The notes under the pieces are model-generated. The model made no database searches. It was not told the origin of the DNA and saw only the letters and a list, made by a program, of their open reading frames with translations. From Schmidtea nova (lineage: Eukaryota): a stretch of DNA of 64,000 nucleotides. A program made the translations under genes and the position numbers. Shown piece by piece: positions 474 through 63,247 of this stretch; the stretch's first letter is position 1; every line of letters starts with the position of its first letter. Location: positions 397,234,001-397,298,000 of the forward strand of contig CM097882.1 of the NCBI GenBank assembly GCA_044892505.1, in the 5' to 3' direction.

Positions 474-1342
474 CTGGTATTCCGGGAGTCGTAGTTCCAG
501 GTGTTGTAGATATAGTCGATGTACTTCCAGTAGTAGTTGTTACAGTAGGAGTTTGTGTTGTAGTAGATCTGGTCGTTGATTCAGTCGTTGATTCAGTCGT
601 TGATCCAGTCGTCGATTCAGTCGTTGATCCAGTCGTTGATTCAGTCGTTGATCCAGTCGTCGATTCAGTCGTTGATCCAATCGTTGATCCAGTCGTTGAT
701 CCAGTCGATGAACTTCCAGAGGTAGTTGTTTCTGACGTTGTACTTAAACCAGTAGTTGTTACAGTAGGAGTTTGAGTTGATGTAGTTCCAGTTGTTGTAG
801 TTCCAGTTGTTGTAGTTCCAGTTGTTGTAGTTCCAGTTGTGGTTGATTCAGTCGGAGTTGTAGTAATTACGGTTGTTGTTTCTTTTTCTCCGCAACCTTC
901 GATTGTTACTTTCAATGTCACTTTCTCTTTGGGTGATGACAAAGTAATTGTAATTTTTATAGCTACCACTTTCTCGACAACCCTCTCAATTTCCTCGTAT
1001 TCCTTTATGTATGTGACAGTGAGACCGGTTTCCAATGGTTTGTATTCCTTTTCGTTCTCATAAAGTACAAGCACACTGAAAAATATATTTTCCATAATTT
1101 TCGATCTTCAATATCTTGAATAAAATCTTACTTGAATGTTTGGATATTGACTATATTTTCAAATTTGATTTTCGTAACGATGACTGGTTTGTAGAATTTT
1201 ATTTCAAATTTCGGTTCTGTTTTAATTACAGTTGCATTCCAGGTGTCAGTTATGAGACTTGTTTCAGATGTTCCTTTTTCTGGTACAACAATTTCTTTCA
1301 CATACTCTTTTGTTGAAATCAAAACAGGCTTTTCCTTGCAAC
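474..1342 (-). CDS. Array 1 cassette (1342-1132, 1075-474)
   Basis: 211 + 602 = 813 nt = 271 codons. Junctions G|GT (Gly), AA|T (Asn), G|. Intron 1076-1131 is 56 nt. Confidence 0.9.
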
Positions 1343-28833: not shown

Positions 28834-28924
<91 letters not shown>

Positions 28925-46900: not shown

Positions 46901-49900
46901 AATAATCAGAAAATGGCATCTCGATTGAAGAAATTGGTTAAAATATATCTACTGAAAATGGATATGATTGATAATTTGAAAAAGAAATTCGAAAATAAGT
47001 TATATGTGGTTATTGGTATTTAACTAGATTACGGGAATAAAATACTGGATCTTTCTAAAAATAAGAAGCATCATCCAGTTTAAGTATTCAAAATGAAAAT
47101 TTTCTCTAGTAGGTGTTATTTTATTCAGTTTTTTGAAGATATCACTGAAAGATTTCCTTCATCATGTATCAAGTATGGATTGGTGCATTATTCTTTAGGA
47201 AACTGAGCCTCTTAATCTCTAGAAGAAAATGAGTAAGCTCATTTTCCAGAATGGCACCGTATCCTCCTTACGTCATGTGATTGCTGTACTTCACTAGAGG
47301 ATAAGTTCCACGAGCTGAGAAAAGACTCCAAAACATAATGGAATGTTATCTATATTTCACAGTTTGCTGAATGCAGTCAGAGTGAAATCATTCTTCTACA
47401 CGACGCCAGCAGCATATCTGTCCTTCAAATTTTAAAAGAGTGATACGTGATTCGTCACTCCAAATGACTAAACGCTTTTATTTTGCTGTCCAACTCTTTC
47501 TCTCCTGACACCACTTCGAGTGACGACGACGAATTGTTTCTGTAATCAAAGGCTTCCTTGCTAAGTATCTACCATAGAAACAATAAAAATGTAATTCTCA
47601 ATGAATTATGGACATGATGTTATACACAGGGACAGTTTTATATATGCTCAAACGTGAATTTGTAAACAATTACCTTAAGATTAATTTTTTACCGACGATG
47701 AGGCACCACAAGTCATTTCAGCTGCCGTTGTGTACGGATGCTCAGATGTTTAGGGTGGCCTGACGTACTTGTTGACATGTGTCTTCTCCTGGCGGTACTT
47801 TCTCAGGAAATACTTACTAGTTCCTTTGTGATTGCTAGTCAACGCAGCAGTTTCACTCTGACTTTTTCCACAAACGTAACAGCCGTAAATAATGCCTTTC
47901 TGAAAAACTGTAATCTCTCTCTGAGTAACCATTTTTAAGAAAATGACAATCCTCCATTATCATGACTCACTGTTGTGAGTCTGATGTGAATAGTCATATC
48001 ATAAGAAAGTAACAATCCTTCATTAACATGACTCACTGTTATCGCTTTTGTGTGTCTGGTGTGAGTAGTCATATTCTGTGTGTGTCTGTGTGTGAGTTCC
48101 TGTGTGCGTACATGTACGCATGCAGCATGTTGAAGGTGTTGGTGACCATTGTTCCCTTTGCTGTTCACATTGCACTGCAGACGTTCATTATAAACTTCAA
48201 TATGTAAATAATATCCTGACTGGAGACTTTTGGTAGGCTAGGGTACCTATGGTAATTAACTAATTTGCATAAATAAAATACTCGATTTTATAAAATGTAA
48301 AAATGCTTTTATTTAATTAGAACGTTTATAAAACAATAAGGAAACATTTAAAATTTGTTGATATTTAAAATAAATAAATTTTACCTGTTATTATGCTGGT
48401 CGTACTTCCCGGTGTTGTAGATGTTAGTGACAGTGAACTAGATCCTGTTTGTGTTGCTGTCGGCGTTTGAGTAGAAATTGTGGTTGATCTCATTGTCGAT
48501 TCTGCCGTTGATTGCTTTTCTACGCATCCCATTATTATCAATTTTAATTTTAGTTCTTCGGATTTGTTAATTTTTGTCATCATTATTGATAGTTTGGACA
48601 CCTTGATATTAATATTGTCAATTTTGATTTGTTCACTTTCGTTTTTATTTTCTTCGTTCGCTTTCAGTATTTTTGATTGTCCAGAATTTCCCTCTGCTAT
48701 AATTATCCTATTTTCATAAATGAAATTTGATAAAATTAATGGAATTTCATATAGTAATCATACGTGTATCTCCCGATGTTTGAATGATGATCAAATATTA
48801 TATCTGTTATAACTATTGGTTGGTAAAAATTTATAATTATATTTGGTGTTATGTCTTTAACATTTGCTGTCCAAAATTCTGTCAAAATCTTTTCTTTATT
48901 TTCAAAATTGCTGCTTGGGATTATTTCGCTTATGAATTCTTTCGTTGAAACTAAGGTTAAATTTTCTTTGCAAACTGAATTATTAGATATTGGTTAAATG
49001 ATAATTATCCATTATATATGTAACTTGATGGTGGCGTTGACGTTGTCGGAGGGGGAGTTTTCGATGTGGTTGGTGTCGTTGAGACTGTCAAAAATAAAAA
49101 TAATATATAATAATTAAATAATATTTTATTTAAGAGATTTGCTATTTTAGTTTTTAGTTATAATTGACTGTTAGTTCATTGGTCTAGTTTTATTATTAGA
49201 AAATCCTTAGTACAGTTTTAGAAATTTTTAATTATTTTTAATTAATAATTTTTACATCCTATAAACTGTTTTATTTTGTTGAGGATACCTAAATTAGAAA
49301 TAATATAATAAATAAACAAAATTACTTGGGGGAAAATCGTCATGGGGAATGACCCGATTGATAGGAGCTTGGGAAAGAAAAGGGGAATAAAAAGGAATGA
49401 GAAATGAGGAAGGAAAACAAAAGAAAAGAAATCAGACAAGGAAAATGAAATAGAGGTCAGCAATAATTAATTAGTGCAAACAGGAAGAAATTCTAAAGTT
49501 GGGAAAAACAAAAAACAACAACAAGAATTTTATCTTGACAACCGGTCAGAGATAACGTGGGCAAAAAAATCAAACAAGTCGGAGCGGCAAAAGAGAAACA
49601 GAGGTTATCTTGACGGCTGTCAGAGATAACTCCGTTGCTGGAAAAATGAATGGGAAATTGTTGGAAAAAATGGAATTACAAGTGGTAATATTAAGTGCCA
49701 CAAAGTGAAGAGATATAAAAGGAGAAACACAGCAGAAGCGATCAGAATTTTAGAAAGAAGTTTCAGAGAAATTTAGAGAGAAGTTTTGACAGAATTAAAG
49801 AAAGAAGTTTAGAGAGCAGAATATAATCAGAAGTTTGGGAGAAGATTTAAGAAAATACCGAGAAAATTATTGGAGAGATTGAAAGATTGTGTGAAGCCAG

Positions 49901-52526
49901 AGGAAACTGAAAGAGAAGAAAATAAAGAACGTGAAAGAAATTGAGTGAAACCCGTTGTCATCGATTAATAATAGAGTAAAACTCAACCAGTAAACCCAAG
50001 TCAAACCCAGAAGACAACCAGCCAGAATACCAATTGTTATACCCCTCAGTGGTGAGTGATCGTTCGAGCCAAGATAATACAAAGTGCTATTCTTCACCAT
50101 CGGGTCGTAATAAGCACCATGTAATCAGTTGTTGGTCTGTTGATTTTGGTCAATTCCGTGTTAAAGAAGATATTTATGATATTCAATAAAATTTTCCAGT
50201 GTTAATTGTTATTGTGGTCAATTAAAAGACACGCTTGGAGTCAGATATTTGATTGGTAACTTTTACCATTTCACCAACAACCCCAGAACCCAAAGATTTC
50301 ATGTAATTATATATTATTCAAAATTTGAAGTTCAGTTGAGAAAAATTTTGACAAATTAAAAGAAATTCATCAAATCTCGCTATCTAAATAATAATAGAAA
50401 ATTCAGATGGGAAGTAAGATATATGGTGAAAGGATGTCAGTCACGCTATAAAGGAAATGTTCATATATTTCTGTCTATTTTCTTAAATACGTATCAGAAC
50501 GAATTTGGATGTTCCTGATAAAGACCCGTTAAGGGCGATCGCCAGCATAACTTACACTGATGGCCGGCTCGGCTTGGCTTGTTATAATAGTAACCTCGAG
50601 CTAGTGTAATACAGTTCTTTCATTCTAATTTTATCATAAAATTTCTCAATCAGTTTCAGTATTAGTCAATTTGACTGGATGGATCTATGCATTTGTTTTG
50701 GAGCCTAACATATGTTAAGGAGTGTCATTAATTTGAATAAAATTAAAATTAAATTTGTTAATAAGATATATTTTGATTTAAATTTATAAAGTTCAATAAA
50801 AATATTTTAAACTCATTTAAATATTTATTAATATTTTATAAAAATTAAGACACATAGTAATTGTTAAATATAATCAAATTATATAATTAACGTTGCACAT
50901 ATGTCCGTAACTTTATATTATATTATTTTAATTCATTTTAAATATTATATTTTTAAATAATTAATTACAGTAATTAAATAATATAAAAAATTTTTATTTT
51001 TTATTATTATAATTTAACAGAAATCTTTTTATTGTTTATCGGTATCGGAGTATTTTTAAAATATAATAATATAATTCCAGATCAATGAGAGAATTAATCT
51101 AAATTATGCCAGTATATCACATGATTTTTCACGATTTACAGCTAGTACATAAATAATCTTTGTTTTATAGAATTAAAGTATCTTTTAATTATTATAAATT
51201 TTATTTCATTTAATGAATAATAAAATTTAATTTACTTAAAATATTTAAATTGTTTCAAAAGCATTTTAAAAACAAATATAAAATACTTAATTTTTAAAAT
51301 TTAATCAATTTTGACAATTTCATTAATTTATTAAGTGATTAATAGACATATAAATAAATATATTTACTTGTTATTAATTATATTTAAAATTCTTTTTAAA
51401 AATAATATATAATTATATCATGTCATACTTGTTGAAGTCGTTGCCGTTTCATTTTTCGTCGTAGTCGGAGTTATTGTTGCCGTAGTAGGTTTTTTCTCAC
51501 CGCAACCTTCAATTTTGGCCTTGATTAGGATGTCCTTATTCTGATCGGATCTTTCGAATATAAATTGGATCGATGTGATTTCAATATCAATGTTGGGAAT
51601 TTTTGTATTTCCATCAATATTTACGTAATTGTCTATGAACTTATTCCACTGATTGCTTGTACGTATCACGGAAATTCTGTAGAAAATTATTAATTTTTAT
51701 TTTTATTTTGAAAAAAAGTAGTACTGATAGCGGTTGACATTGACAAAAAAGAACGATATTGTTTTTATGTACATTTTACTATTGAATTCTATTTTCAATT
51801 GTGGTTTCAAATCTCTGATAAATGGTTCCCATCCGATTTCTGTCATAATTTCATCAGCACCTCCATTGGTACCCTTGATTGATGATGCTGAGATTGATTT
51901 CACATATTCCCATTTCGAAATGACGACAGGTTCCTCACAAACTAAAGACGGTATCGATAAGACTCGTGAAGGTTAATATAATAAAGTATTACATTTAGCT
52001 GTTGTTGATTTGGCTGTGGAGAAAGTGGCTGAAAGATGAAATACATAACAAAATTATTTCATTTTTATTATTTATCCATGCTAGTGGATAAAGAAATATT
52101 TTCCAGGAAATAATTTTATAGATAAAAGTTATTCATAGTTTTAGAAAATTATAATTTGATATTATTTCATTTGTATTTCAAAAAATATATAAATAACAAA
52201 TAATTTCTTTAATAATTTTGTATAATTTACAAATAAATTTTTCAAAATTAAAATAAGGGGTTTTCAAAATTTTGTGATATTGGACTCCTTCAAGAAATTC
52301 TCAACTTTGCATTGACCCCTTATATTACATTATGCATTGAAATGTGTCGACCAAACAAATGAACCGTCCTCTGATGAAGAGTCCAGGTTTCAAAAGATTT
52401 CATCCGTTTAGTTTGTTTTGCGAGGATATTATAAAATTAGGACCCTGATTTATCAACCTTGAAATTGTAAATATTACTTTGCATAATAAAAATTGTAATG
52501 AAACTAATTAATCGTATTGATAAATT

Positions 52527-52588
<62 letters not shown>

Positions 52589-55500
52589 TTTCAAAACATA
52601 TCAAAACATTTTTTTTCACAAAATTTTTGGCACTGCATTTTTTAAATGTTTGTTTATTAAAGATAAATTGTTTAATAGCAAATTATTTATAGCAAATTGT
52701 TTAAAGAGAAGAAAATTAATTTTTTGTCTTAAAAAAACAAGTGTATAAAATTGCAAATAATATCCAAGGTGAAATAAATTCAAAGATTTTAACTTTTATA
52801 GCGCTATGGACACATGTGTTCGGCAAAATCGTTCACCGCGGGCTACGAACTAATATATTGGTATTCACACAACCATTTAATCTGGGCTATAAACGCACAT
52901 TTGCGATTGATGCTTGTAAGCCTAGCGATATAAAAACATAGTACACCATGTTTCAATCAATATATTTTACAATGAAATTTCAGAGTTAGTAAGCCCAGCA
53001 CGCGAGTTGTCATAAAATGTTTGCAGCCCACAATACACGCTCAATGTCGCACAACTCAGTACTCAAATGGTTAATGAATGATAAGTAGAAAAATAAATTA
53101 TAAATGAAAAATAATAATAACTTGTTTCACTTAATGTTGAAGTAATTGCCGTTTCGATTGTTGTCATTATTGTTGATGTGGAAACTATAACCAGTCAAAT
53201 ACATAAATTTATATACAGATATTATTAGCCTACCGGTTGTAATGCAGTCAGCTATTATTTCTTTTTCGCATTCAAATCCGTTTATTTTACACGTACTAAA
53301 TTTATAATAAAATTATTTCAAAACATTAAAATAACCATTTATGACAGTTTTTAATTATAGTCATTCCTAAAGGATATTCTTTGCCATTTTCATCTTTGCA
53401 TGTGCATTGAGGTTTTTCAGATACACATTGATCTAATATGCATAATACAATAAAATATTATAAATATTAATTTTATTGATTAAAAAGCATTAAATATTTG
53501 CAATATATTTAATTTTTTTGTAATCACTAAATTTAAGCAAATTTTTTTTTAAATTTTAGCAAAGTAATTTCAGAAATTTCCATAATTTTATTTTAAAGAC
53601 TATAGATAGGGTTGCCTGGTGAAACATTAAAGGATACCGGACAAAATTTTAAAATAAACCTTAGACTATGCTATTTTTAAAAAAAACTAAATTTTAAAAT
53701 AAAAATAAGATATTTTTATTATTTTTTATATTTTTCATTCTGCGAAGTAGCTTTTAGCAGTTTTTTATTTTTAGAAAATATTTCTTTTAACATTTTGGCA
53801 TATATAAGGAATATTAAAGAAGATACAAAATTCGCTTTTTACTAAATTCAACGACATCCGATTACGTTCGTTAGTCCATAGATTGCCCGTCACACTAAAA
53901 ATTAATATAAAATTATATTTAGTTTTTCACTTAATAATTCAAACTTTAGATTAATTTATCACTTTACTATACCGGCAGAAAACTTTAAATAATACTTTAA
54001 TATTTTGCATTTCATATTAAACTACAATTTTTATAAAATAAAATTTTCAATAGCCTACTACGGTATAAAAAATTTGAATTTCAAAATTTTCAAAGCATTA
54101 GGAGAAATACCGGACAAATGTACGTCCGGTCCTTCTAACTTTTTTCCCACCGGACAAGTAGTTGAATTAATGGACTGTCCGGTTCGAAACCGGATACCTA
54201 GCAACCGTAACTATAGATCAAAGTTTTTTTATTTGCAAACGAATTCTTGGTAATGTGATTTTCTTACACACTATAAATAGGCAGTGCCGAAAATCCGCGT
54301 GGCAATATAACAGAAATTTAATCTAGTCTTAAAAATACAATTATGGAAATTACTAGAATAGAAAAGAAAAAATCAAAGATGAATGAAATAACATTTGCTA
54401 CTGATTAAGAAAATAATATTATATAATATATAAAAAAAATTATCGGATGACTGTTTTAAAAACAAATTAAAAAGTATCACTTTGTGATACACAGTGCAAT
54501 CTTTGCGTCTCATTTATAGCACCAATGACAGCCAATAGCTCAAAACTAGTGTATCACAAAACTAGGGTATCACAAAGCTTTACCTTTTATTAATATTATA
54601 TAAGTTATATTTTATATGAATTTAATTTTTTTTAAGTTTCCAAGGTAAATTAAGCTATTTACTTAAGATTATTAAATTATACAATAATTAATACCGTCTT
54701 TTAAATATGTGTTATTTTTGCAAAAGCATCCTTCCATACAATCTGAAATACAACTTCTAGTTCCTATACATGTTTCTGGACAAACTTTTTCACAAGGTTT
54801 ATATTCTCGATCTGGTGGACACATGATTGCTGGAAATTTTTGAATAAACACATGTAAATCATATCAACTATATTTACGGCAATTTTCATAGTTTCTCCAT
54901 TGAATCTTTATATTGTATCTGTTGCATTCATGTACATATTGAGATATTGCTGTGCACACACAAAGACAGTCATCCCCGCGATCACAAGCACAAGAATCTT
55001 GTACGCATTTATCATAATATAACTGGTATCTTACAGTGCTATGACAAGGCTCAAAAGTTTCACTTTTCAAAATAGAACAACGTTTAATGGCCCAACTTTC
55101 TCTAAATTTGTTAATATCACATGGGTTTTTAGTAACTTCAGGATATGGACATGATGTCTTAAGTTTCCAGCTGTCAGCAAATGCATTTACATCCGCATCA
55201 ATTATCCCAGCTCGATTTCTAAAAATATTAAATTTTTAATCATTAATAATGTAAATTTTTTCAATGATTAACATATTCAACTATTTGGGTCACAACTTTA
55301 TTTTAGAAAAAAATTAATTAAATATTATTTTAATAAAATCATTTTTCTTATTGTTCAATTTTAATCTTTTTCTCTTTTTGTTCGTCTTTATTTACTTTTC
55401 TATTAAAGAGAAATATTTTTTATATTTAGTAGAAAATATTTTACACTTAATTCTAGTTAGTTACATACAATTTTTAAAAGAACGTTATTTGAAAATTTTC

Positions 55501-57000
55501 TCTCTATCATATAATGCATAATCTGTCCAATTTCACGAAGTAGCTCTTTTCTACAGTTATATTATGTTAGACATTAAAAATGATTAACTTTATTTTAACT
55601 TATTGATTTGAATTTTTGCTTTATTTTAATTTACAACATGATGTTTTTATTCTTACATGTCAACAAAAAATCCTCGTTCATCTTTCCTTGTCAAATTTCA
55701 GCAAATATTTCTTTTAAAACTTTATGTTGTATTTATTATTAAAGATTTATTTAAAATAAATTTGGCATATTAATTTGAATTTTGCCAAATAGTCATGGTA
55801 ACGGTAGCTAAATTTAAGAAATGTACTTANNNNNNNNNNNNNNNNNNNNNNNNNNNNNNNNNNNNNNNNNNNNNNNNNNNNNNNNNNNNNNNNNNNNNNN
55901 NNNNNNNNNNNNNNNNNNNNNNNNNNNNNNNNNNNNNNNNNNNNNNNNNNNNNNNNNNNNNNNNNNNNNNNNNNNNNNNNNNNNNNNNNNNNNNNNNNNN
56001 NNNNNNNNNNNNNNNNNNNNNNNNNNNNNNNNNNATAAAATTAAATAATATATAATAAATAAATAAAATGTTTGGAGTAAAATTGACAGTGTAAACGATA
56101 TGATGTTCTGGAATTCGGTGAAAAAGAAGGAAAACAAAAATTTTAAAAATAAGAAGATAATAGCAAAATTAAAGAAATCAAAAAAAAGTAAATGAAGGTT
56201 ATTGCTAATTAATAATTACAAAAGGGAAAAATAAATTCCAAAATTGAAAACAAAAACAAGAAAGAAATTCATATATTGACAGCTGGTCAGAGATAACAAG
56301 AGTGCAGAAGAAAAATTGAAACAACAAAAAGGAAAGAATGGCAAATCTCGACATCTGTCAGAAATAATGCAGTAGTTATGAAAAAAGTAGAGTATGCTGG
56401 AGGCAAAGAAAGGCGAAAACAACAATAATCTCAAGTACCAGAGAAGGGCAGTCTATAAAAATGATAAGCTACAGTTGATGAATAATAAAAAATTAGTAAA
56501 AGTAAAGTATTGGAAGTTAATTAATTAGTGGAGACAAATTCGTAGAGAATATATATAGAAGAATTTGAGAGTATATACTAAAAACGAGTTTTTAGTAATT
56601 TATAGAGTTCAAGCGAGAAATAACGAATCCAAAAATCAATTGAATACTAACAGAGGAAAAACCTAACGAGTAAAATAACCAAGTCAAAGTCAGAGAGGAC
56701 AATTAGATCGATTTTCCAATTGTTGAATCTAAGTCAGTAGTGGGTGATAGTAAATTATAGATACTATACGCTAATGCTATTCTTCGTGAAGTGTTGTAAT
56801 AAGCACTGTATAGTAACCCGTGGTGATATTGAATAGGTCATGTAAATGTAATCTGTTTTGTCATTTGTAAAAATAAATAAAGGTTTAAATTGTCTGAAAA
56901 TCAAATAAAGCACGCTTGTAGTCAGATAACTAATTGGTTAATTTGTATATCATCAACAACCCAATAACACAACATTCTATTTAATTGTACTTGACGTTCA

Positions 57001-57065
<65 letters not shown>

Positions 57066-60000
57066 AATTATTTTACACAGCAACACAAATGTTTTTTGCA
57101 AGAATTCATTAGTAAATATTACCGTAGGTCATTGTCAACATTGTCATCAAAATTTCCGCACAATCCGCAAACATTACTTTTATATTCCGGTGACAAAATG
57201 ACATCAACTGACAATTGCCGATCCCATTGAATAGTGACTTCTTTCGTAACTATGACAATGCTGCTGATGTAATCATGTTTGGAAAATATTCCCGTTCCCA
57301 AATAAGGTGACCAAGTAGGATTTCTGCCGATTATTGGTGCAGCACCACGAATCAAATGAATAATGTGATCTTTATAGTAGAATCTTATTGATTTAGTACA
57401 ACTTGTACCCTTGGCACCGCATTCTACATTTTCGATTACTATTCTGAATATTCCGGATTTTTTGTTGCAATAGTCTTCCAGTAAAACATAACTACAGTCT
57501 CCTTGAAAATCGAAAAACTTCCCATCAAAAGACATGTAATGTGATTCACCCCATGCTTTGCATAAACCTTAATAATTTATAAAATATTATTGTCTCATCT
57601 AATTTATTATAAAAGATTTAATGATTTACCAGCACAGTCTCGTTTTGGACATTCCCATTTTCCACTTCTGCAAGTACTGCATTAAAATTTATATTTAAAA
57701 TTCAACTAAAATTATAGCATTATATACCATGTCAATTGGCATTCAAATGGGCCACGAGTTATCACTGCCGATTCATTGAAACTTTGATTTTGCCAAAAAC
57801 ATGGACATTCACCTTTTGGGATACACTTGTTGTTATCATAGACTTCTCCGTTTTCGCAATAGCATCCGGGTTCACAGGAATTTGGATCACAAATTAAATT
57901 CATGTCTCTACATGTTCTTTGACAACCACCACAATCTTTCCATACTTTTCCATTAGGACAATAGCTCTGTGCTGCATTTTATACATAATTTAATAGTAAA
58001 TTATCAGATGTTGTATTACACGAGCAATCTTTAGTTGTACAGTTCCACAATCCGTTGATGCAAGTGCATGTATTGCAGCGATCTTTTCTTTCTTCTTTAG
58101 CATTATAATCTCTTCCCATATACTCGCACTTGCAGTCTTCAACTTTAACGCAATTTCCGCTTTTTTCTTCAATAACCATATCCTAAAGAATCTGAGTAAA
58201 AAGACATTGAGATATTTATAAGCTTACATCAGGACATTGGCAACCATCTATACAATCGTTATCGCAATTCGGTCTTTGTCTTAGTCGGCAAGTCGCGGAA
58301 CAACTTGATCCACATTCTTTGTAAACCATATTCTTTGGACATGTTACAGCTAAAAATATAAAATTGTTAGAGAAACTCCGAATCTAAAACATTATTACGG
58401 CAAAACTCTGGCGTTCTCCACTGAAATTGAATTCCTTTAATTGAGCATATTCTAGCATATGCAGAGTACGCTGAGCATTCGCAATTTACGGTGCTGGCAT
58501 TTCTCAATAAGCCACAGTTACAAACATCATGTTTACATTGAGTAACAAATTTATCCGATGAAACCAAGGCTTCGCAATCTTTGAATGGACCTTAAATTCA
58601 CTAAATTAAAAGAATTAATCCTAAAGTTTATCTGACCTTGTCCGAATTTCCCGCAAACTTCATTGGCAATCTTTCCCCATTCAATACTTGTTTCACATAA
58701 TCCAAGATACGACTGCCTTAATACTTCTCCATGACAAGTTTGAGTTAATCTATATCTCGCTGCTAATTCAGAATCATCCTTTGCCGGCGCACCGTCAGGC
58801 ATGATGTTGTCGTCTTCGGGATCTCCATTGAAATTTCCACATAGCCCGGTTACCTAAGACGCATTTACTACAATTCTTTTGTCCCTAAACTCCATTTACC
58901 TTTTTCGCGTATTTAGCCGACAAAACTAATTCTATTCGTGAATCGTCTTTCCGAAAAACGCTAAACAGATCTCCTGCCTCAATCTTTAAGCCGTCGCTTG
59001 TGACTTTAAACACTGAAATTTCTACACCTTTATTGACTTTGGACGGTATAATTGCGATCTTGCTGTTTATTAATACTTCGGTTTTGGATTTAATTCTAAA
59101 TTCAATTGGATAAAATCTGCGTTATTTTGATTCACAAACATACTCGATTTCAGTTTGATTTAAACCTTCTCCGAAAAGTATTTTTATTCCTTTGGCACAT
59201 GTTATATCTTCGGAATTAAAACAAAATTTATTTTCAACGATAATTGACAATTGCGGCATGTCACTCTCGATTTCTTTAGGCATAACAGCAATATATTGGC
59301 ATTGTCCTTCTACAAAAATGTGTTGATTGTCAAAGGTAACAAAGTGCGGATCTCCAGTAATGATACATCTCGACGAACATTGGTCGTGAGTGTCGCAATT
59401 CCATAAACCTCGACTCTCGCATAGACTGCAAACGGAAACGAAAGTTAAGTTTCTATGTTGTGATATCATTTACCAATTTTGGCAGCCTTTCTTCATTTTA
59501 TCACCGAATTTATATGAATTTATTTGTTTTGCTGATGCTCGGTATTCACATGGACATTCATCTGCTCTTTTGCATTGGTTCTTGTACCAAAAGAAGTCTA
59601 TTTAAAAGAATGTTATACATTACTTATTATATAAATTTATTTTAATAATTAATTTAATTTTTCTTAATGAAAGTCAATTTATTTTTTAACTAATCTATTT
59701 CTGTCCAAAGTATGATATAAGGCAGGGCTTCTTAAACTTTTTTCATTCACGACCCCATCTATGATTGTGGATTTTTTTTGGTGACCCCATATAAATATAA
59801 AATACAGATATATAAATATTTTATGATGATTTATTGATTAGGTTTAGAATTTGTTTAGAAACATATAAAAATATAAAATTCAAAATTGAACAAAAAGTTG
59901 TTAAATTGTATTTATTATAGTTACAAATATTATATGCTGTATTTTTCATCAAAATTTCAGTTTTGGTAATAAAACATTTAAATTTTATTTTAAATTCGTG

Positions 60001-63000
60001 TATTTAAATATTTTACATTTAAATCTCGTGACCCCGTTTGGGATCGCGACCCATAGTTTAAGAAGTCTTGATATAAGGTAAGCAAGACGAATGAACACAA
60101 GTGAGGGTAATCATAATACAATGTGCTTATTCTGATGCCTGTAAAATATTTAATCTTTTGAAAAACTTATATAAAGCAATTTTAAGTCGTTGAAATACTG
60201 TTTTGTATACAGGACAGTCTTTCAACTATATAAAAATTTAACATAAGATTAACTAATTAGTGCATAAGATTATTTTGATATCAATCGCAACATTTCTTTG
60301 AACAAAAATTATTCATAAGCTTAAACGTGACATTAAAGATCGATGTATACATAAACCAACTTATATCCTTTTAAAACAAATTCCTGCTATAAGCAGAGAA
60401 ATGTGTAGAGCATTCAAATCATACATACAGTCAGATGCACTTGACAACTAGATACAAATAAATACATCCGAGTCTATTTTAACCTATCCAGCTAACACAC
60501 AAAAAATCACTTGAGCGTGATCGAAAATATTGAAATGGTGTATTATCACAAAATAAATTAAACCATGATTATTTGGTGGTATAAACAAATAAACAGCAAA
60601 TGTCCATTATAGAACATAATATTGCGCTTTGTAAATTGTTACTATGTCTAAATAGTTCTTTGGTAAACATTTGGTCATATTTATGCAGCAGTTTATTTAT
60701 TTTTATTTCAAATAAATTGTTAAAAGAAAACTGGGGACTGACTAAAGCTACTTATATAAAAACGAAAACAAATAACAATAAAATGTAAAATTTTTAATGG
60801 CTGACTTCTTTTGAGCTTATCTACATTTTATCGGCACCATGTAAGAAACTCATTCTTTCAAGGCACTAATGAAAGCCAAAAATGCTTTAAACATTAAAAT
60901 CTTAATTTTAATCATTAAGTCATCCGAATCCAAAAAATCATCGGAACTAGAAAATATTCAATATTCAATTGTTGTTTCATCTAGGAGAAAAGAAATGGGG
61001 AGACATTTTCATTAATGAAAATCTTAATTGGACGAAAGCCCTGGTTTAACACTAGACATACCAATGCGGTCAAATGACAGCCTTTTAGACTTTGATCAAA
61101 ATTTTTAAATACAATTTTTTCGATTTTCCTCAACTTTTTTTACTTTTTCTTTAATATATAGATATTTAATTTTTCAACATTTATCTCTCTATTTCTTTCG
61201 TCTTTGCTGATCATCCTATGCGTTGTACCGCTATCTACCATGGCAGGTTTTTTAGCAAATAAAAAATGTTTTAACTTAGTGTTCATATGGCCTTTATGAC
61301 ATTTTCAAATAATTTTTAATAAAGAAATATTTTTAAGAAAAAATTATTACAAAATAGTCTGTACCTTTTCTACAATAACAACCAGGAGTACAAATTTTTG
61401 AACAGTCCACATCGTCATTGTTGAATCCGCATCTGTTATTGCAATTATTTCCACAGTCAGACCAAATCATTTTATTCGGACAAATTGGTTCTTCTAAATA
61501 CATAAAGAAATTTCATTTACCTATTTACTTAATGGCAAATAAATTTAAAATATAATATATTATAATTTTATTCATTTCTTTACCACAGTCTAATTTATAT
61601 CTCCAATTGTTGCTGATGACATTGTCCGGGGAGCTCAAAAACGCGATATCCCTTAATAAGTCACACGAGTTTTTCTTATTTTTCATTTGACAAAATTCTG
61701 CATAACAAATTTCATCGAATTTTTTTCCGAAAATTGCTATGACTTTCTCGCACGTTGCCATCTGAAGTTTTGTAAAAAATAATCAAATTGATCTAGTTTT
61801 AAAATATTCCAAATACTTCATTCAGATCACAATTTATCATTTGAATAGCCGGATCAGGCTTCAAACGGTTTTCTCTCGATACTGATAACCATGTTTTTAT
61901 GAAATCCAGATCTGAATAAATTGGGTTCATTGACGCATCAACCGTTTCGAACTTGTCTTCACCATTGCCATCGTAAAGACCGCACAAGCCACAGACTTGC
62001 TTTTTCATTGTCGCTGGAGCAAACACAAAAATTGATCCTTTTTTATTGTAGAAAATACTCAAATCTATCCAGAAAATATTTTATGTTAAAACTGAAAGTC
62101 TTTTGCTTAAAAACCGAACCTTTGATTCCTTTGACATAGAAATATTGTCCCCGGTCAGATATTTGAAATTCGGCTTTGCTATATGGGAATGAATAACTGA
62201 TATTTCCAACTTTCACTCCTTCTGATGAAAGGTAAGTCGATTCAACACTATCTTTGAATAGGAACTAAAATAATCAAAAATACTTATTATTATAATAAAT
62301 TATTAATAATTATTATTATGATAATCATNNNNNNNNNNNNNNNNNNNNNNNNNNNNNNNNNNNNNNNNNNNNNNNNNNNNNNNNNNNNNNNNNNNNNNNN
62401 NNNNNNNNNNNNNNNNNNNNNNNNNNNNNNNNNNNNNNNNNNNNNNNNNNNNNNNNNNNNNNNNNNNNNNNNNNNNNNNNNNNNNNNNNNNNNNNNNNNN
62501 NNNNNNNNNNNNNNNNNNNNNNNNNNNNNNNNNNNNNNNNNNNNNNNNNNNNNNNNNNNNNNNNNNNNNNNNNNNNNNNNNNNNNNNNNNNNNNNNNNNN
62601 NNNNNNNNNNNNNNNNNNNNNNNNNNNNNNNNNNNNNNNNNNNNNNNNNNNNNNNNNNNNNNNNNNNNNNNNNNNNNNNNNNNNNNNNNNNNNNNNNNNN
62701 NNNNNNNNNNNNNNNNNNNNNNNNNNNNNNNNNNNNNNNNNNNTAACTTTGATTGTAATTTCACAATCATCACTGGTTTTATTTGAACAGCTTTCATGAG
62801 GAATAACAATTATTTGATAGGTAGGCGGTCGATTTAGGCAATCTTGGACTAAAACCATATTTCCAGTGAAATTTGTTTGGACTGTTTTAGTTCTATCGAA
62901 TGTTTTGTAAGACCTCCCATTCATATATGCGCATTGTGCTTGTTCGGCTAACTCAAAGTTCTTAGCCACTAGAATAAACATATTGCAGTTCAAAATTAAA

Positions 63001-63247
63001 TATTTTTTAAAATAAATATATTTTAACCTGGCGCCACTTCAGCCCCATAAAGTTCACATTGCTGTCCAAATCTGCTTGTTTCTCTACAGTCGCATATATT
63101 CGGTTCTATGCATTTTCCTGGACCGCAGCCTTTTTCACAAACCGCTGGAAAAAAATAACATACATAAAAAAATTATTCATTAATATTTTGCTATTTATCC
63201 TACGTTCATTGCATATCTTTCCGGACCATCCAAGGCAACACGCTTTT
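474..63247 (-). CDS. Giant multi-exon secreted VWD/C8/TIL + discoidin-like + Thr-rich protein (gel-forming mucin / hemolectin / SCO-spondin-like), incomplete at both ends
   Basis: GT-AG exons could be chained with matching phases from 63247 to 474, except the junction after the 29.1 kb exon, which is unresolved. Motifs: VCGLCGNFD and GDPHFVTFD (VWD), C8 and TIL Cys spacing, long T/S runs. The family call comes from motif recognition; orthology was not tested. Confidence 0.85.
2239..3047 (-). CDS. Array 1 cassette (3047-2837, 2780-2239)
   Basis: 251 aa; L to F variant (KPFETG). Confidence 0.88.
3942..4810 (-). CDS. Array 1 cassette (4810-4600, 4543-3942)
   Basis: 271 aa. Confidence 0.88.
5707..6575 (-). 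CDS. Array 1 cassette (6575-6365, 6308-5707)
   Basis: 271 aa. Confidence 0.88.
7472..8340 (-). CDS. Array 1 cassette (8340-8130, 8073-7472)
   Basis: 271 aa. Confidence 0.88.
9235..10067 (-). CDS. Array 1 cassette (10067-9857, 9800-9235)
   Basis: 259 aa. Confidence 0.88.
10964..11805 (-). CDS. Array 1 cassette (11805-11595, 11538-10964)
   Basis: 262 aa. Confidence 0.88.
12702..13723 (-). CDS. Array 1 cassette (13723-13513, 13456-12702)
   Basis: 322 aa; internal linker duplication. Confidence 0.88.
14620..15629 (-). CDS. Array 1 cassette (15629-15419, 15362-14620)
   Basis: Canonical sites; 318 aa; internal linker duplication. Confidence 0.88.
17279..18492 (+). mobile_element. Mariner (DD34D-type) transposon, defective
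   Basis: STIYDHVVRLGFISDLDVWILHKL, FLKRIITRDEK, LELGWDVLPRPPYSP, DYHLFRSL; stops and frameshifts; degenerate TIRs GGTTGTTTGGAAATTTCAGCCGATTTT (about 17283) and AAAATCGACAGAGTTTCCGAACAAACC (about 18462). Confidence 0.88.
17457..17586. other. Assembly gap (130 N)
   Basis: N run. Confidence 1.
20072..20753 (-). CDS. Microexon plus TIL/vWC-like and PTS exons (20753-20739, 20668-20628, 20578-20361, 20303-20171, 20116-20072)
   Basis: LNCSC-TTTICPTTRPQCI-VPKYCLYEKTCEETCQK...CNCPTEY...LCVKSTNCNCPCMC...VGELCQINECQICQC...TTKVIPTTPGTYG. The last donor is phase 1, matching exon A at 15629. Confidence 0.75.
21400..21751 (+). mobile_element. hAT (Charlie-like) non-autonomous element
   Basis: Ends CAGTGATT...AATCACTG; TSD GACTAGAG / GACTAGAT (7 of 8); remnant of a transposase C-terminus (EMRASLS...KQVQSFH*). 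Confidence 0.7.
22432..22609 (-). CDS. Cys-rich exon
   Basis: Phase 1 to 2; CKPKCVTSIDCEW...VCKFCPPDTIEKDGYCF; donor AA|GTACGT. Confidence 0.72.
25062..25362 (-). CDS. Cys-rich exon
   Basis: ENYHVSYDEDMCCSCNAD...NCHKDCSNC...DCTCPPG...TTTTQITTTSA; acceptor TTACAG|, donor T|GTAAAT. Confidence 0.75.
26100..27910. repeat. Three degenerate copies of a roughly 100-150 bp motif (about 26100, 27300, 27820)
   Basis: Shared core GTATTGGAGTGATCA...ATATTT.ATCAAATAA. Confidence 0.65.
28837..28923. repeat. (TA)n microsatellite
   Basis: Pure TA run. Confidence 0.97.
29020..29103 (-). CDS. Probable small exon YIMPGVMFKEYCREI; donor uncertain
   Basis: Good acceptor TTTACAG| in phase 0, matching the upstream exon. 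The 3' end is ambiguous (G|GTGAGA or GGG|GTCTGT). Confidence 0.45.
29261..29761 (-). mobile_element. Intronic 166-aa ORF, possibly the C-terminal part of a pogo-like DDE transposase
   Basis: ANAFKFCGI...LHSILQRLL resembles the post-catalytic motif of pogo-family transposases. It lacks mucin-type Cys/Thr composition. Confidence 0.35.
30283..30558. mobile_element. pogo/Tigger-like short non-autonomous element
   Basis: Right end reverse complement TACAGTAATCTCTCGCCACTTCGCG; left end TACAGG...TCGCGGTTAATCCGCTCCAGAC..CCGCGATAAGTGAA. Termini resemble Tigger-like elements (recognised from memory). Confidence 0.5.
30822..31316 (-). CDS. More divergent discoidin-like module 4 (31316-31120, 31067-30822)
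   Basis: APCVIVETLQY...FSMKFTFDG...Q|IFIGEYIKSVHVIY...FSMKIFGC-FKASSCIVDGKKYW. The internal intron is phase 0, unlike the other modules. Confidence 0.7.
31365..31992 (-). CDS. Divergent discoidin-like module 3 plus S/T linker (31992-31782, 31729-31365)
   Basis: 211-nt first exon ISTKEFVNEV...SWNGT...FFRRPVTISKIKIEN; second exon ...VSLKVSIEGC plus TTT/SSS linker. Confidence 0.85.
32570..32684 (-). pseudogene. Truncated or degenerate copy of exon A with intact acceptor
   Basis: Reads GCKEKPVLISTKEYVKEIFVPIKGIYGSRFIIYIIPNKM then TAA (32568-32566). Homology to exon A is lost after about 80 nt. Confidence 0.65.
33590..34323 (-). CDS. Array 2 cassette with shorter linker (34323-34113, 34056-33590)
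   Basis: Same splice sites; linker 28 aa shorter; 226 aa. Confidence 0.88.
35232..36049 (-). CDS. Array 2 cassette (36049-35839, 35782-35232)
   Basis: Same splice sites. Confidence 0.88.
36958..37775 (-). CDS. Array 2 cassette (37775-37565, 37508-36958)
   Basis: Same splice sites. Confidence 0.88.
38684..39501 (-). CDS. Array 2 cassette (39501-39291, 39234-38684)
   Basis: Same splice sites. Confidence 0.88.
40410..41227 (-). CDS. Array 2 cassette (41227-41017, 40960-40410)
   Basis: Same splice sites; TTPRIPG variant. Confidence 0.88.
42136..42953 (-). CDS. Array 2 cassette (42953-42743, 42686-42136)
   Basis: Same splice sites; TTPGIPG variant. Confidence 0.88.
43862..44679 (-). CDS. Array 2 cassette (44679-44469, 44412-43862)
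   Basis: Same splice sites; TTPGIPG variant. Confidence 0.88.
45588..46405 (-). CDS. Array 2 cassette (exon A 46405-46195, exon B 46138-45588)
   Basis: Acceptor TTTCAG|GT TGC, 56-nt phase-2 intron, donor CCAG|GTAAAA; 254 aa. Confidence 0.88.
47110..47540 (-). mobile_element. Tc1-like transposase relic
   Basis: Minus-strand fragments VIWSDESRITLLKFEGQICCWRR...TVK, IMFWSLFSARG, ILENEL and NNAPIHT resemble the Tc1 DDE core; interrupted by stops and frameshifts. Confidence 0.72.
48385..49084 (-). CDS. PTS exon (49084-49025) and divergent discoidin-like module 2 (48974-48764, 48707-48385)
   Basis: CKENLTLVSTKEFISEI...FWTANV...FYQPIVIT...LKLKLIIMGC plus T/S linker. The first module exon is 211 nt, the same as array exon A. 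Confidence 0.8.
49480..50290. repeat. Unclassified interspersed repeat, copy 1
   Basis: Shares GCTATTCTTC, GTAATAAGCAC, CACGCTTG.AGTCAGATA, ATTGGT and CAGAGATAAC in the same order with 56150-56980. Confidence 0.55.
51429..51941 (-). CDS. Divergent discoidin-like module 1 plus Thr linker (exons 51941-51725, 51676-51429)
   Basis: CEEPVVISKWEYV...GWEPFIRDLKPQLKIEF...ILIKAKIEGC. Same two-exon layout with a phase-2 internal intron as the array cassette. Confidence 0.8.
51993..53432 (-). CDS. Short Cys-rich (vWC-like) and Thr-rich exons (53432-53336, 53295-53234, 53184-53131, 52028-51993)
   Basis: QCVSEKPQCTCKDENGKEYPLG...NCHKCTCKINGFEC, then STSTIMTTIET and TFSTAKSTTAK. Phases are consistent. 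Confidence 0.75.
52530..52584. repeat. (TA)n microsatellite
   Basis: Pure TA run. Confidence 0.97.
53607..54209. mobile_element. hAT-type MITE
   Basis: Ends TAGGGTTGCCTGG / CCTAGCAACCGTA; perfect 8-bp TSD ACTATAGA; subterminal CCGGAC repeats. Confidence 0.8.
54695..55218 (-). CDS. C8 (55218-54878) and TIL (54829-54695) exons of the third D assembly
   Basis: YYDKCVQDSCACDRGDDCLCVCTAISQYVHEC; CPPDREYKPCEKVCPETC...CMEGCFC. Phase 2 to phase 2 joins VWD3 across the 55830-56034 gap. Confidence 0.88.
55830..56034. other. Assembly gap (205 N), intronic
   Basis: N run. Confidence 1.
56150..56980. repeat. Unclassified interspersed repeat, copy 2
   Basis: Collinear diverged motifs with 49480-50290. 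Confidence 0.55.
57001..57063. repeat. (ATT)n microsatellite
   Basis: Pure ATT run. Confidence 0.97.
57123..58185 (-). CDS. TIL/vWC-like exons and VWD3
   Basis: ERKDRCNTCTCINGLWNC; CEPGCYCENG; exon 57567-57123 GLCKAWGESHYMSFDGKFFDFQGDCSYVL...VCGLCGNFDDNVDNDLR. Confidence 0.9.
58230..59597 (-). CDS. TIL end, VWD2, C8 and TIL exons
   Basis: Exons 59597-59474 and 59425-59144 (CIITGDPHFVTFD), then about 59095-58900, 58853 onward (VTGLCGNFNGD), PFKDCEALVSSDKFVTQCKHDVCNC and CPKNMVYKECGSSCSATC. Some inner boundaries are approximate. Confidence 0.85.
59723..60070. mobile_element. hAT-type MITE
   Basis: TIR CAGGGCTTCTTAAACT / AGTTTAAGAAGTCTTG; perfect 8-bp TSD ATATAAGG; subterminal GACCCC motifs. 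Confidence 0.85.
61365..62968 (-). CDS. VWD1-C8-TIL exons (62968-62748, 62264-62120, 62064-61817, 61761-61584, 61493-61365)
   Basis: CAYMNGRSYKTFD...VCGLCGLYDGNGED; TIL CPNKMIWSDCGNNCNNRC...CTPGCYC. Phases match across the 62329-62743 gap. Confidence 0.85.
62329..62743. other. Assembly gap (415 N), intronic
   Basis: N run. Confidence 1.
63028..63247 (-). CDS. N-terminal EMI-like end and EGF-like exons (63247-63204, 63144-63028)
   Basis: Spliced translation KACCLGWSGKICNEP-VCEKGCGPGKCIEPNICDCRETSRFGQQCE. Not in the ORF track. A further small exon near 63305-63340 is likely. Confidence 0.75.

What the first reader, a model, noticed from the sequence alone, without database searches (positions are those of the whole stretch)
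474..63247. Giant beads-on-a-string mucin: three D assemblies followed by at least 21 discoidin-like domains alternating with Thr-rich linkers
Seen: phase-compatible splicing joins EMI-like/EGF-(VWD-C8-TIL)x3 to 17 near-identical cassettes plus 4 divergent ones. Each cassette encodes a domain of about 131 aa bounded by two Cys (GCKEKP ... LKVTIEGC) and a T/S/G linker. The 17 cassettes add about 4500 aa and the array runs off the window. Known: F5/8 type C (discoidin) domains start with a Cys and end in an LRxELxGC-like motif whose Cys pairs with it; hemolectin and SCO-spondin carry only one or two such domains; vertebrate MUC2/5AC/5B interleave PTS with CysD. Inference: a secreted polymeric mucus, adhesive or clotting protein well over 6000 aa displaying a highly multivalent array of lectin-like domains. 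Invertebrate mucins with F5/8C domains have been reported; the copy number and cassette-array build are what stand out.
Basis: partly seen in the sequence, partly recalled or inferred. Interest (0 to 1): 0.85.

Follow-up and report, generated by a model that had tools for sequence, protein, structure and literature searches.

The report
Giant mucin with 31 discoidin-like beads
This window holds most of one very large invertebrate mucus-type (gel-forming mucin) gene in which about 31 small lectin-like domains alternate with sugar-carrying threonine-rich linkers; it is an extreme version of a known layout, and no RNA data yet back it.

Summary
On the minus strand, Pfam finds three VWD-C8-TIL assemblies plus a D' TIL. 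These are followed by 2-exon cassettes, each a 131-aa Cys-to-Cys domain plus a linker of about 55% Thr. The window holds 17 near-identical and 4 divergent cassettes. Nine more identical cassettes, a fifth divergent one and a C-terminal cystine knot lie below the window.

With canonical GT-AG sites, 71 exons from the end of D3 to the stop codon join into one stop-free frame of 8,117 codons. The whole protein is about 9,300 aa. All three assembly gaps fall in introns.

Between the two arrays the domain-coding DNA differs at 6 of 409 sites, all synonymous. Introns differ by 11-13%. The domain is therefore under purifying selection.

The discoidin reading holds at fold and superfamily level only. 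Pfam F5_F8_type_C is the top hit but below threshold. A profile of the domain reaches true F5/8C domains in a Ciona mucin-like protein. An AlphaFold model of the orthologous domain is a galactose-binding-like jelly roll.

The only sequencing runs found were DNA, so there is no transcript evidence. Mucin-like proteins with F5/8C domains are already described in Lophotrochozoa. This gene is a new variant of a known kind.

The parts
63026..63250 (-). Two small Cys-rich exons (..CCLGWSGKIC.. and an EGF-like exon) upstream of VWD1. The start codon and signal peptide were not identified.
   Evidence: sequence and splice phases; only weak EGF hits (E=0.015) and no EMI hit.
61336..63038 (-). D1 assembly: VWD1 (exons 63038-62744, 62264-~62100, 62080-61802), C8-1 (61782-61528) and TIL-1 (61512-61336). 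The gap at 62329-62743 lies in an intron.
   Evidence: CGLCG motif seen.
57982..59601 (-). D2 assembly: E1 remainder, VWD2 (59469-58554, with a GDPH motif), C8-2, TIL-2 and E2.
   Evidence: VWD 3.2e-10, C8 1.1e-15. (TIL 5.3e-9, VWF E-module 1.4e-4).
57628..57978 (-). D' (TIL' and E').
   Evidence: TIL 4.1e-9. Colinear with P0004 residues 1-73.
53131..57568 (-). D3 assembly: VWD3 (57568-57122), C8-3 (55229-54867), TIL-3 (54863-54675), E3 (53432-53336 and 53295-53234), then a short S/T exon (53184-53131). The gap at 55830-56034 is intronic.
51429..51941 (-). Divergent cassette d1 (exons 51941-51725 and 51676-51429).
   Evidence: 47.6 bits against a profile of the other domains. P0004 aligns at 60% identity.
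48385..48974 (-). Divergent cassette d2 (exons 48974-48764 and 48707-48385).
   Evidence: 59.6 bits.
33590..46405 (-). Array 1: 8 near-identical 2-exon cassettes, period 1726 nt. Each codes a 131-aa domain plus a ~122-aa linker of 56% Thr.
32592..32684 (-). Truncated copy of exon A after array 1. It keeps the acceptor but has no in-phase donor and runs into a stop. It is presumed skipped.
30822..31992 (-). Divergent cassettes d3 (31992-31782 and 31729-31365) and d4 (31316-31120 and 31067-30822). d4 is a marginal member.
   Evidence: d3 61.3 bits, d4 9.1 bits.
20171..27050 (-). Five unique Cys-rich exons between the arrays: 27050-26931, 25362-25062, 22609-22428, 20597-20361 and 20303-20171. The last ends in an S/T stretch in phase 1.
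   Evidence: Single-copy in the genome. No Pfam family.
474..15629 (-). Array 2, in-window part: 9 near-identical cassettes with periods of 1705-1918 nt and linkers of about 120-190 aa. The array continues below the window.
   Evidence: Nine further copies, d5, a cystine knot and the stop are in L004 and L005.

Best explanation
This is one roughly 82-kb minus-strand gene of an AT-rich invertebrate genome. It encodes a secreted, polymer-forming mucin of about 9,300 aa.

Domain order:
- small Cys-rich/EGF-like exons;
- D1-D2-D'-D3 (VWD-C8-TIL-E assemblies);
- cassettes d1 and d2;
- 8 identical cassettes;
- d3 and d4;
- five Cys-rich exons;
- 18 identical cassettes;
- d5;
- a C-terminal cystine knot.

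Each cassette is a 127-132-aa domain closed by a first and a last Cys, followed by a Thr/Ser/Gly linker of about 120-190 aa. The domain is a divergent member of the discoidin / F5-8C / CBM32 (galactose-binding-like) jelly-roll superfamily.

Inferred mechanism, by analogy with MUC2, MUC5B and VWF:
- tail-to-tail dimerisation through the cystine knot;
- head-to-head disulfide multimerisation through D3;
- dense O-glycosylation of the linkers, turning them into stiff rods;
- the ~31 folded beads acting as regularly spaced non-glycosylated nodes, the role CysD domains play in vertebrate mucins.

The beads may bind glycans or surfaces and so cross-link or anchor the gel.

Shown here: domain content, exon structure, the open frame, selective constraint and the fold of an orthologous bead.

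Inferred only: secretion, polymerisation, glycosylation, ligand binding and tissue.
For: 1. D assemblies: Pfam hits. The orthologous D'D3 is closest to MUC5AC, MUC2 and MUC5B.

2. Cystine knot: Pfam Cys_knot is the only hit, at E=6.9e-5 and 23.5 bits against a cut-off of 24.0, covering 7-91 of 105 positions.

3. One frame: 71 exons, all with AG...GT boundaries, join into 8,117 codons without a stop from 53432 down to 18,055 bases below the window's first base. This part is 38.7% Ser+Thr.

4. Constraint between the two arrays:
- exon A differs at 2 of 211 nt;
- the domain part of exon B differs at 4 of 198 nt;
- all six changes are synonymous;
- the long intron is 86.5% identical;
- the 56-nt intron between the two exons differs at 6 of 56 sites.

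5. Uniqueness: the canonical exon A occurs 26 times in the 1.25-Gb genome, always in this gene.

6. Conservation elsewhere:
- Orthologous database proteins P0001 (last cassette, d5, knot) and P0004 (D'D3 plus d1) exist.
- Two environmental contigs carry the same cassette. L022 has the same 211-nt exon A, the same intron phases and a Thr-rich linker.

7. Fold and homology of the bead:
- F5_F8_type_C is the only or top Pfam hit for spliced d5 (E=0.0042), P0001 (0.0041) and the L022 cassette (0.0035).
- The exon-A profile hits Ciona mucin-5AC-like at E=2.9e-7 among 1.84 billion proteins.
- The full-domain profile hits the same protein at E=1.1e-10, in five stretches. The one stretch whose Pfam coordinates were returned overlaps a true F5/8C domain in register, and the spacing of the other four fits.
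- Atlas search, AlphaFold and Foldseek agree on the jelly-roll fold.
Against: - No transcript evidence. The four runs found are genomic DNA, with contigs colinear through introns.
- No start codon or signal peptide was found.
- The link from array 1 to array 2 crosses 18 kb. That stretch holds a TE-like ORF, a truncated exon A with an intact acceptor, an assembly gap, and one junction (22.4 kb to 20.6 kb) that stays in frame only with weaker sites. I chose splice sites to keep the frame, so the single ORF is not an independent test.
- The canonical domain itself has no Pfam hit. Its two halves find nothing convincing among solved structures.
- The AlphaFold alignment contained true Ciona F5/8C rows, which may pull the model towards that fold.
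- The copy number of 99-100% identical cassettes depends on the assembly.
Confidence: 0.72

Rival explanations
1. There are two adjacent genes rather than one. An upstream gene would run D1-D3, d1, d2, array 1, d3, d4 and some Cys-rich exons. A separate downstream gene would run array 2, d5 and the cystine knot. Alternatively, the upstream transcript may end at the truncated exon A.
For: - 18 kb separates the arrays and contains a TE-like ORF and a gap.
- The truncated exon A at 32684 keeps a perfect acceptor and runs into a stop.
- The 22.4 kb to 20.6 kb junction is ambiguous.
- No RNA data are available.
- Pfam does not recognise the Cys-rich exons.
Against: - Array 2 begins with a phase-1 acceptor and has no start codon or signal peptide of its own.
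- The exon at 20303-20171 ends in an S/T stretch in phase 1, which is exactly what a cassette acceptor needs.
- d4's exon B ends at a phase-0 donor inside a Cys-rich stretch, so the upstream part has no natural end.
- A stop-free chain with GT-AG sites exists through the whole interval.
- The intervening Cys-rich open frames are single-copy and too long and Cys-rich for chance in 29% GC DNA (own estimate).
- Only the downstream end carries the cystine knot that a D1-D3 mucin needs in order to polymerise.
Confidence: 0.2
2. The gene is as described, but the product is a glue or cohesive component of an adhesive or capture secretion, or a clotting protein of the hemolectin type, rather than a lubricating or barrier mucus.
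For: - VWD-C8-TIL combined with lectin-type domains is a recurring theme in aquatic adhesive proteins of flatworms, sea stars and limpets (PMC8621496).
- Hemolectin combines three VWD units with F5/8C domains (PMC4948705).
Against: - Hemolectin's two further C-terminal VWD units are absent here.
- About 4,000 aa of Thr-rich linker plus a terminal cystine knot is the gel-forming-mucin signature.
- Function and tissue could not be tested with these tools.
Confidence: 0.25
3. The arrays are decaying or untranscribed exon-like repeats, or an assembly artefact, and not part of a working protein.
For: There is no RNA evidence. Repeats that are 99-100% identical are hard to assemble.
Against: - Between the arrays there are zero non-synonymous and 6 synonymous changes, while introns diverge 11-13%.
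- No cassette carries a stop or frameshift.
- Linker lengths vary in a higher-order two-cassette pattern.
- Relatives keep the same cassette.
Confidence: 0.04

Closest known systems
Vertebrate gel-forming mucins (MUC2, MUC5AC, MUC5B) and VWF
   Same: - The N-terminus is D1-D2-D'-D3 built of VWD-C8-TIL-E units.
- The CGLCG motif is present in D1 and D3.
- The long Ser/Thr-rich central region is interrupted by small folded Cys-bounded domains.
- There is a C-terminal cystine knot.
- The orthologous D'D3 is about 36% identical to fish MUC5AC, MUC2 and MUC5B.
   Different: - The interrupting domain is a discoidin-like jelly roll, not CysD.
- No D4 was found, and no VWC domain is recognised by Pfam before the knot.
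- The linkers are Thr/Ser/Gly-rich with only 4-5% Pro.
- The central region is built of 2-exon cassettes, not one giant exon.
Lophotrochozoan and arthropod mucin-like proteins with F5_F8_type_C domains, including hemolectin (Lang et al. 2016, PMC4948705)
   Same: Three N-terminal VWD-C8-TIL units are followed by discoidin-type domains. The paper states that the F5_F8 domain is characteristic of lophotrochozoan mucin-like proteins.
   Different: - Hemolectin has a '3+2' VWD layout with few F5/8C domains and little or no PTS.
- This gene has no C-terminal VWD units.
- It has about 31 beads, each paired with a long linker.
- The beads fall below the Pfam threshold.
Ciona intestinalis 'mucin-5AC-like' XP_026696163.1 (P0011)
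   Same: - It has five Cys...GC-bounded F5/8C domains, each followed by a ~110-aa Thr/Ser/Pro linker. TIL/VWC-type Cys-rich modules and more PTS follow.
- It is the only named protein reached by the cassette profile.
   Different: - It has only 5 beads, which diverge from one another and are clear Pfam F5/8C members (E=3e-58).
- The gene model has no VWD part.
- Single-domain scores against the cassette profile are weak (24.5 bits at most).
Discoidin / F5-8C / CBM32 / DOC domains (galactose-binding-like fold)
   Same: - The size is similar, at about 130 aa.
- A first and a last Cys bracket the domain.
- The conserved Trp and the ...I.F..P..IT.I... strand pattern are present.
- The C-terminal L+V.I.GC motif is present.
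- The model of the orthologous bead matches muskelin discoidin, APC10, CBM32, Bacteroides F5/8C, neuropilin b1, CASPR2 and FVIII C2 at TM 0.55-0.74.
   Different: - Sequence scores are below the Pfam cut-off (17.6-17.9 bits against 28.2).
- The canonical copies have lost the '..S.DG..W' motif that d1, d5 and the L022 relative keep.
- No ligand-binding residues could be assigned.

Membership tests
Gel-forming mucin / VWF family | N-terminal D1-D2-D'-D3 made of VWD-C8-TIL(-E) assemblies | tested here: met
   Pfam finds VWD x3, C8 x3, TIL x4 and an E module in the right order. The order is colinear with ortholog P0004.
Gel-forming mucin / VWF family | Long Pro/Thr/Ser (PTS) region(s) suited to dense O-glycosylation | tested here: met
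   Linkers are 53-56% Thr and 14-17% Ser. There are 3,136 Ser+Thr in the 8,117 residues after D3. Pro is low, at 4-5%. Glycosylation itself is not testable here.
Gel-forming mucin / VWF family | C-terminal cystine-knot (CTCK) dimerisation domain | tested here: inconclusive
   Cys_knot is the only Pfam hit, at E=6.9e-5 and 23.5 bits, 0.5 bit under the cut-off. The CxGxC and CCxP...CxCxxC motifs are present. The domain lies below the window, in L005.
Gel-forming mucin / VWF family | Signal peptide, secretion and disulfide-linked polymers | not testable with these tools
   No start codon or signal peptide was identified upstream of 63250. No RNA or protein data are available.
Vertebrate MUC2/5AC/5B subtype | CysD domains in the PTS region, and D4-B-C domains before the knot | tested here: not met
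   No CysD (Mucin2_WxxW), fourth VWD or VWC hit appeared in any scanned piece.
Pfam F5_F8_type_C (PF00754) | Score at or above the curated gathering threshold (28.2 bits) | tested here: not met
   - Canonical domain: no hit.
- d1: no hit.
- d5: 17.6 bits, E=0.0042.
- Ortholog P0001: 17.7 bits.
- L022 relative: 17.9 bits.
- The genome-wide six-frame scan with PF00754 lists 18 places, none in this gene.
Galactose-binding-like (discoidin) fold superfamily | Eight-stranded jelly-roll fold, with the N- and C-terminal Cys placed to pair | tested here: inconclusive
   - Met for the orthologous d5 domain P0001:131-262. AlphaFold gives pLDDT 82.7 and pTM 0.79. Foldseek gives 289 PDB matches at E<=0.001, all listed ones of this fold. 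The Atlas gives TM 0.72-0.80.
- The window's own spliced domains could not be folded. Their link to d5 is by profile only, at 45-99 bits in leave-one-out tests.
Hemolectin type (3+2 VWD) | Two further VWD-C8-TIL units after the F5/8C domains | tested here: not met
   No VWD or C8 was found downstream of 54675, either in the window or in the 40 kb below it.

The most novel reading that the evidence does not exclude
The ~31 discoidin-like beads are active lectins that bind the O-glycans of neighbouring linkers, on the same or another chain. The polymer would then be a self-cross-linking 'lectin-glycan zipper'. Its gel strength or stickiness would be set by bead number. Homogenised 2-exon cassettes would let that number change quickly by unequal crossing-over.
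Probability: 0.12. Interest if true: 0.7.

Novelty: new variant of a known kind. Interest (0 to 1): 0.45.

Why it matters
Vertebrate mucins interrupt their glycan rods with CysD domains, and the role of those domains in gel architecture is still debated. This gene fills the same positions with about 31 copies of a different fold, one with a lectin pedigree. The copies are kept identical at protein level by selection (0 of 6 changes are non-synonymous) while their introns drift.

If expressed, it is a natural experiment in how folded nodes spaced along a mucin polymer shape mucus or glue. It is also a clean example of a protein region encoded by exon-intron cassette arrays rather than by a single giant repeat exon.

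The gene also defines a divergent discoidin subfamily that current Pfam thresholds miss. Relatives of that subfamily are present in environmental metagenomes.

Tried and rejected
- RNA support. The look-up of sequencing runs gave four runs. The 0.46 word share of three of them first looked exon-like. Read laying showed they are low-coverage DNA: contigs run through introns, and all 'joints' have 20-23-nt sides in repeats. There is no transcript evidence.
- Exon B search. The search for homologous proteins with the domain half of exon B found nothing in its length range.
- Spliced canonical domain. After that it was not sent to any other remote tool, so the canonical unit itself was never folded.
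- Half-domain profiles against PDB sequences. Exon A found nothing. Exon B gave only chance-level hits.
- Local hhalign of the six-domain alignment against this genome's own PF00754 matches. These look like F-type lectins by eye. No similarity was found (probability 0.1).
- VWC reading of the d4-to-27050 junction. The Cys pattern looks VWC-like by eye, but Pfam gives nothing. That junction rests on phase and open frame only.
- EMI label. No Pfam support.
- Source organism of P0001 and P0004. These are UniParc-only records without a name, and the encoding contig is not on record. From memory, a 1.25-Gb, 29% GC genome in three very large pieces suggests a planarian flatworm. This was not tested.
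- Spliced sequences sent to Pfam as typed letters: d5, d1, the knot, the d4 junction and the L022 cassette. These were typed from script output and are not exact window strings.

Full report
**What is there**

The window is 29% GC. It carries, on the minus strand, a long series of short open frames separated by AT-rich introns.

Pfam on the open-frame pieces identifies:
- VWD1-C8-TIL (63038-61336);
- VWD2-C8-TIL-E (59469-57982);
- a free TIL with E' (57978-57628, the D' position);
- VWD3-C8-TIL-E (57568-53234).

This is the D1-D2-D'-D3 order of gel-forming mucins and VWF. The best named homologues of the orthologous D'D3 segment are fish MUC5AC, MUC2 and MUC5B at about 36% identity. Upstream there are only two small Cys-rich exons. 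One gives weak EGF hits and there is no EMI hit. I could not find a start codon with a usable donor or a signal peptide.

**Cassettes**

Each canonical unit has the following structure:
- exon A, 211 nt, with acceptor cag|GT TGC in phase 1;
- a 56-nt phase-2 intron;
- exon B, ending CCA G|gtaaa in phase 1;
- a ~900-nt intron.

The unit codes a 131-aa Cys-to-Cys domain (CKEKPV...TIEGC) plus a linker of 53-56% Thr, 14-17% Ser and 11-12% Gly.

The window holds 8 units at 46405-33590 and 9 at 15629-474. The divergent units d1, d2, d3 and d4 share the Cys boundaries and the position of the internal intron; its phase 2 is shared by d1-d3 and d5 but is 0 in d4. In leave-one-out profile tests d1, d2, d3 and d5 score 45-61 bits, while d4 scores only 9.

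**Beyond the window**

The window is G000:C1:397234001-397298000. In the 40 kb below it there are:
- nine more canonical units;
- a fifth divergent unit, d5;
- directly after d5's short S/T linker, a cystine knot split over two exons and ending in a stop 18,055 bases below the window's first base.

Pfam Cys_knot is the only hit for the spliced knot, at E=6.9e-5 and 23.5 bits against a cut-off of 24.0.

The totals are 26 canonical units plus 4-5 divergent ones. The canonical exon A occurs nowhere else in the 1.25-Gb genome.

**Assembly gaps (tested first, as asked)**

- 62329-62743: the exon reaches the gap at ...ATC AAA|GTTA. An AT-rich stretch with a good acceptor follows the gap. The phase-0 join ...ITIK|FLFKD... 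matches ...SIR FYYKD... at the same point of VWD3.
- 55830-56034: this lies between the VWD3 and C8-3 exons. Ortholog P0004 is continuous across it.
- 17457-17586: this lies in the intron before array 2. About 80 nt on each side are inverted copies of each other. That suggests an unresolved foldback element rather than a join of unrelated contigs.

No letters were filled in or looked up.

**One gene or two**

The two arrays are 18 kb apart. After array 1 there is a truncated exon A with an intact acceptor but no in-phase donor. Then come d3 and d4. The interval further holds:
- five unique Cys-rich open frames at 27050, 25362, 22609, 20597 and 20303, single-copy in the genome;
- a TE-like ORF at 29827-29264.

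The last Cys-rich exon ends ...QSTSTEITT in phase 1, which is what a cassette acceptor needs.

Joining 71 exons with AG/GT at every boundary gives one stop-free frame of 8,117 codons, from E3 to the stop after the knot. With about 1,250 aa upstream, the protein is about 9,300 aa. I chose the sites so that the frame is kept. One junction (22.4 kb to 20.6 kb) needs weaker sites. This makes the single-gene model coherent but does not prove it. I put one gene at about 0.75.

**Is it coding and constrained?**

Within each array the units are 99.5-99.8% identical in the long intron and 100% identical in exon A. That is the signature of concerted evolution.

Between the arrays:
- the long intron is 86.5% identical;
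- the 56-nt intron between the two exons differs at 6 of 56 sites;
- the 409 domain-coding bases differ at 6 sites, all synonymous.

Gene conversion would not spare a 56-nt intron lying between two conserved exons. This is purifying selection on the protein.

Relatives exist:
- P0001 carries the last cassette, d5 and the knot (73% identical to this locus over d5 plus knot by tblastn; the d5 domain itself about 82% by eye).
- P0004 carries TIL'-VWD3-C8-TIL-E joined to d1 (87-93% identical in the conserved parts). It is a gene model and is not known to rest on RNA.
- Two environmental contigs of about 1 kb carry the cassette. L022 has a Thr-rich linker exon in phase 1, a 211-nt exon A, a phase-2 intron and an exon B with a further Thr-rich linker.

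**What the bead is**

Sequence evidence is sub-threshold but consistent:
- F5_F8_type_C is the only or top Pfam hit for spliced d5 (E=0.0042), for P0001 (0.0041) and for the L022 cassette (0.0035), in register.
- The canonical unit and d1 give nothing.
- A profile of the six exon-A pieces, searched against 1.84 billion proteins, finds the orthologues and then Ciona mucin-5AC-like (E=2.9e-7).
- The local full-domain profile scores that Ciona protein at E=1.1e-10 in five stretches. The one stretch whose Pfam coordinates were returned overlaps a bona fide F5/8C domain in register, the spacing of the other four fits the remaining four domains, and Pfam reports five F5/8C stretches overall at E=3.7e-59.

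Fold evidence comes from the orthologous d5 domain, P0001:131-262:
- Its Atlas neighbours by language-model features are nearly all F5/8C clusters (score 0.94).
- The Atlas's own model aligns to galactose-binding-like folds at TM 0.72-0.80.
- An AlphaFold model from a 15-row alignment has pLDDT 82.7 and pTM 0.79 and is all-beta.
- Foldseek matches muskelin discoidin, APC10/DOC, CBM32, Bacteroides F5/8C, neuropilin b1, CASPR2 and FVIII C2 at probability 1.00.

Caveats:
- The alignment contained true Ciona F5/8C rows.
- The fold was shown for an orthologue of d5, not for the canonical unit. The canonical unit is tied to d5 only by profile similarity, shared exon structure and shared Cys boundaries.
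- Remote tools refuse spliced sequences, so the canonical unit was not folded.

**Comparison with what is known**

Lang et al. 2016 (PMC4948705) report F5_F8 domains as characteristic of lophotrochozoan mucin-like proteins. They also describe hemolectin's 3+2 VWD layout.

The Ciona protein already shows five F5/8C beads alternating with PTS linkers.

New here are:
- the scale, at about 31 beads and about 9,300 aa;
- the full mucin frame, with D1-D3 at one end, a cystine knot at the other, and no D4 or hemolectin-type C-terminal VWDs;
- the divergent bead subfamily;
- the two homogenised exon-intron cassette arrays.

I class it as a new variant of a known kind.

**Function**

Inferred only: polymerisation through the knot and D3, O-glycosylated rod-like linkers, and beads acting as spaced nodes that may bind glycans or surfaces. 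Whether the product is barrier mucus, gliding mucus or an adhesive (compare PMC8621496) cannot be decided here.

**Earlier scan notes**

Earlier notes on this genome list other giant mucin genes elsewhere on the same chromosome. I did not test them.

Noticed in passing
window 59330-59370 (VWD2 exon, minus strand): VWD2 carries a GDPH motif (..CIITGDPHFVTFD..). This is the autocatalytic Asp-Pro cleavage motif known from MUC2/MUC5AC D4 and FCGBP. VWD1 and VWD3 lack it.
   Followed up: no
window 49100-50300 and 53500-54300: Contig k-mer depth in the DNA runs rises 100- to 1000-fold above the flanks. These are very high-copy repeats inside introns of the mucin gene.
   Followed up: no
window 29264-29827 (minus strand): A 188-aa open frame with no Pfam hit sits in the long intron after d4. 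It looks like the tail of a transposase-type ORF.
   Followed up: partly
window 17377-17666: The assembly gap at 17457-17586 is flanked by ~80-nt arms that are reverse complements of each other at about 96%. It looks like a foldback or MITE-like element whose centre was not resolved.
   Followed up: yes
L003:7714-8832 (7.7-8.8 kb above the window's high end, minus strand): A separate single-exon 373-aa ORF has an N-terminal hydrophobic segment and what looks, by eye, like tandem C2 domains (synaptotagmin-like). It is the next gene upstream of the mucin.
   Followed up: no
G000:C2:402.95-403.14 Mb and G000:C1:457.00-457.21 Mb (loci L011-L019): Two clusters of single-exon secreted proteins of about 170 aa match PF00754. 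By eye they have the look of F-type (fucose-binding) lectins. They are unrelated to the mucin bead by hhalign.
   Followed up: partly
window 15629 down to L005 (array 2): Array 2 has a higher-order repeat. Cassettes with KPFETG and a 255-aa unit alternate with cassettes with KPLETG and a 271-aa unit, giving a ~3.48-kb double period over at least ten units.
   Followed up: partly
L020, L021 (ENA metagenome assemblies) and L022 (JGI 3300031718): Environmental metagenome contigs of about 1 kb (24-35% GC) carry the same mucin cassette. This is eukaryotic DNA in metagenomes, probably from related animals.
   Followed up: partly
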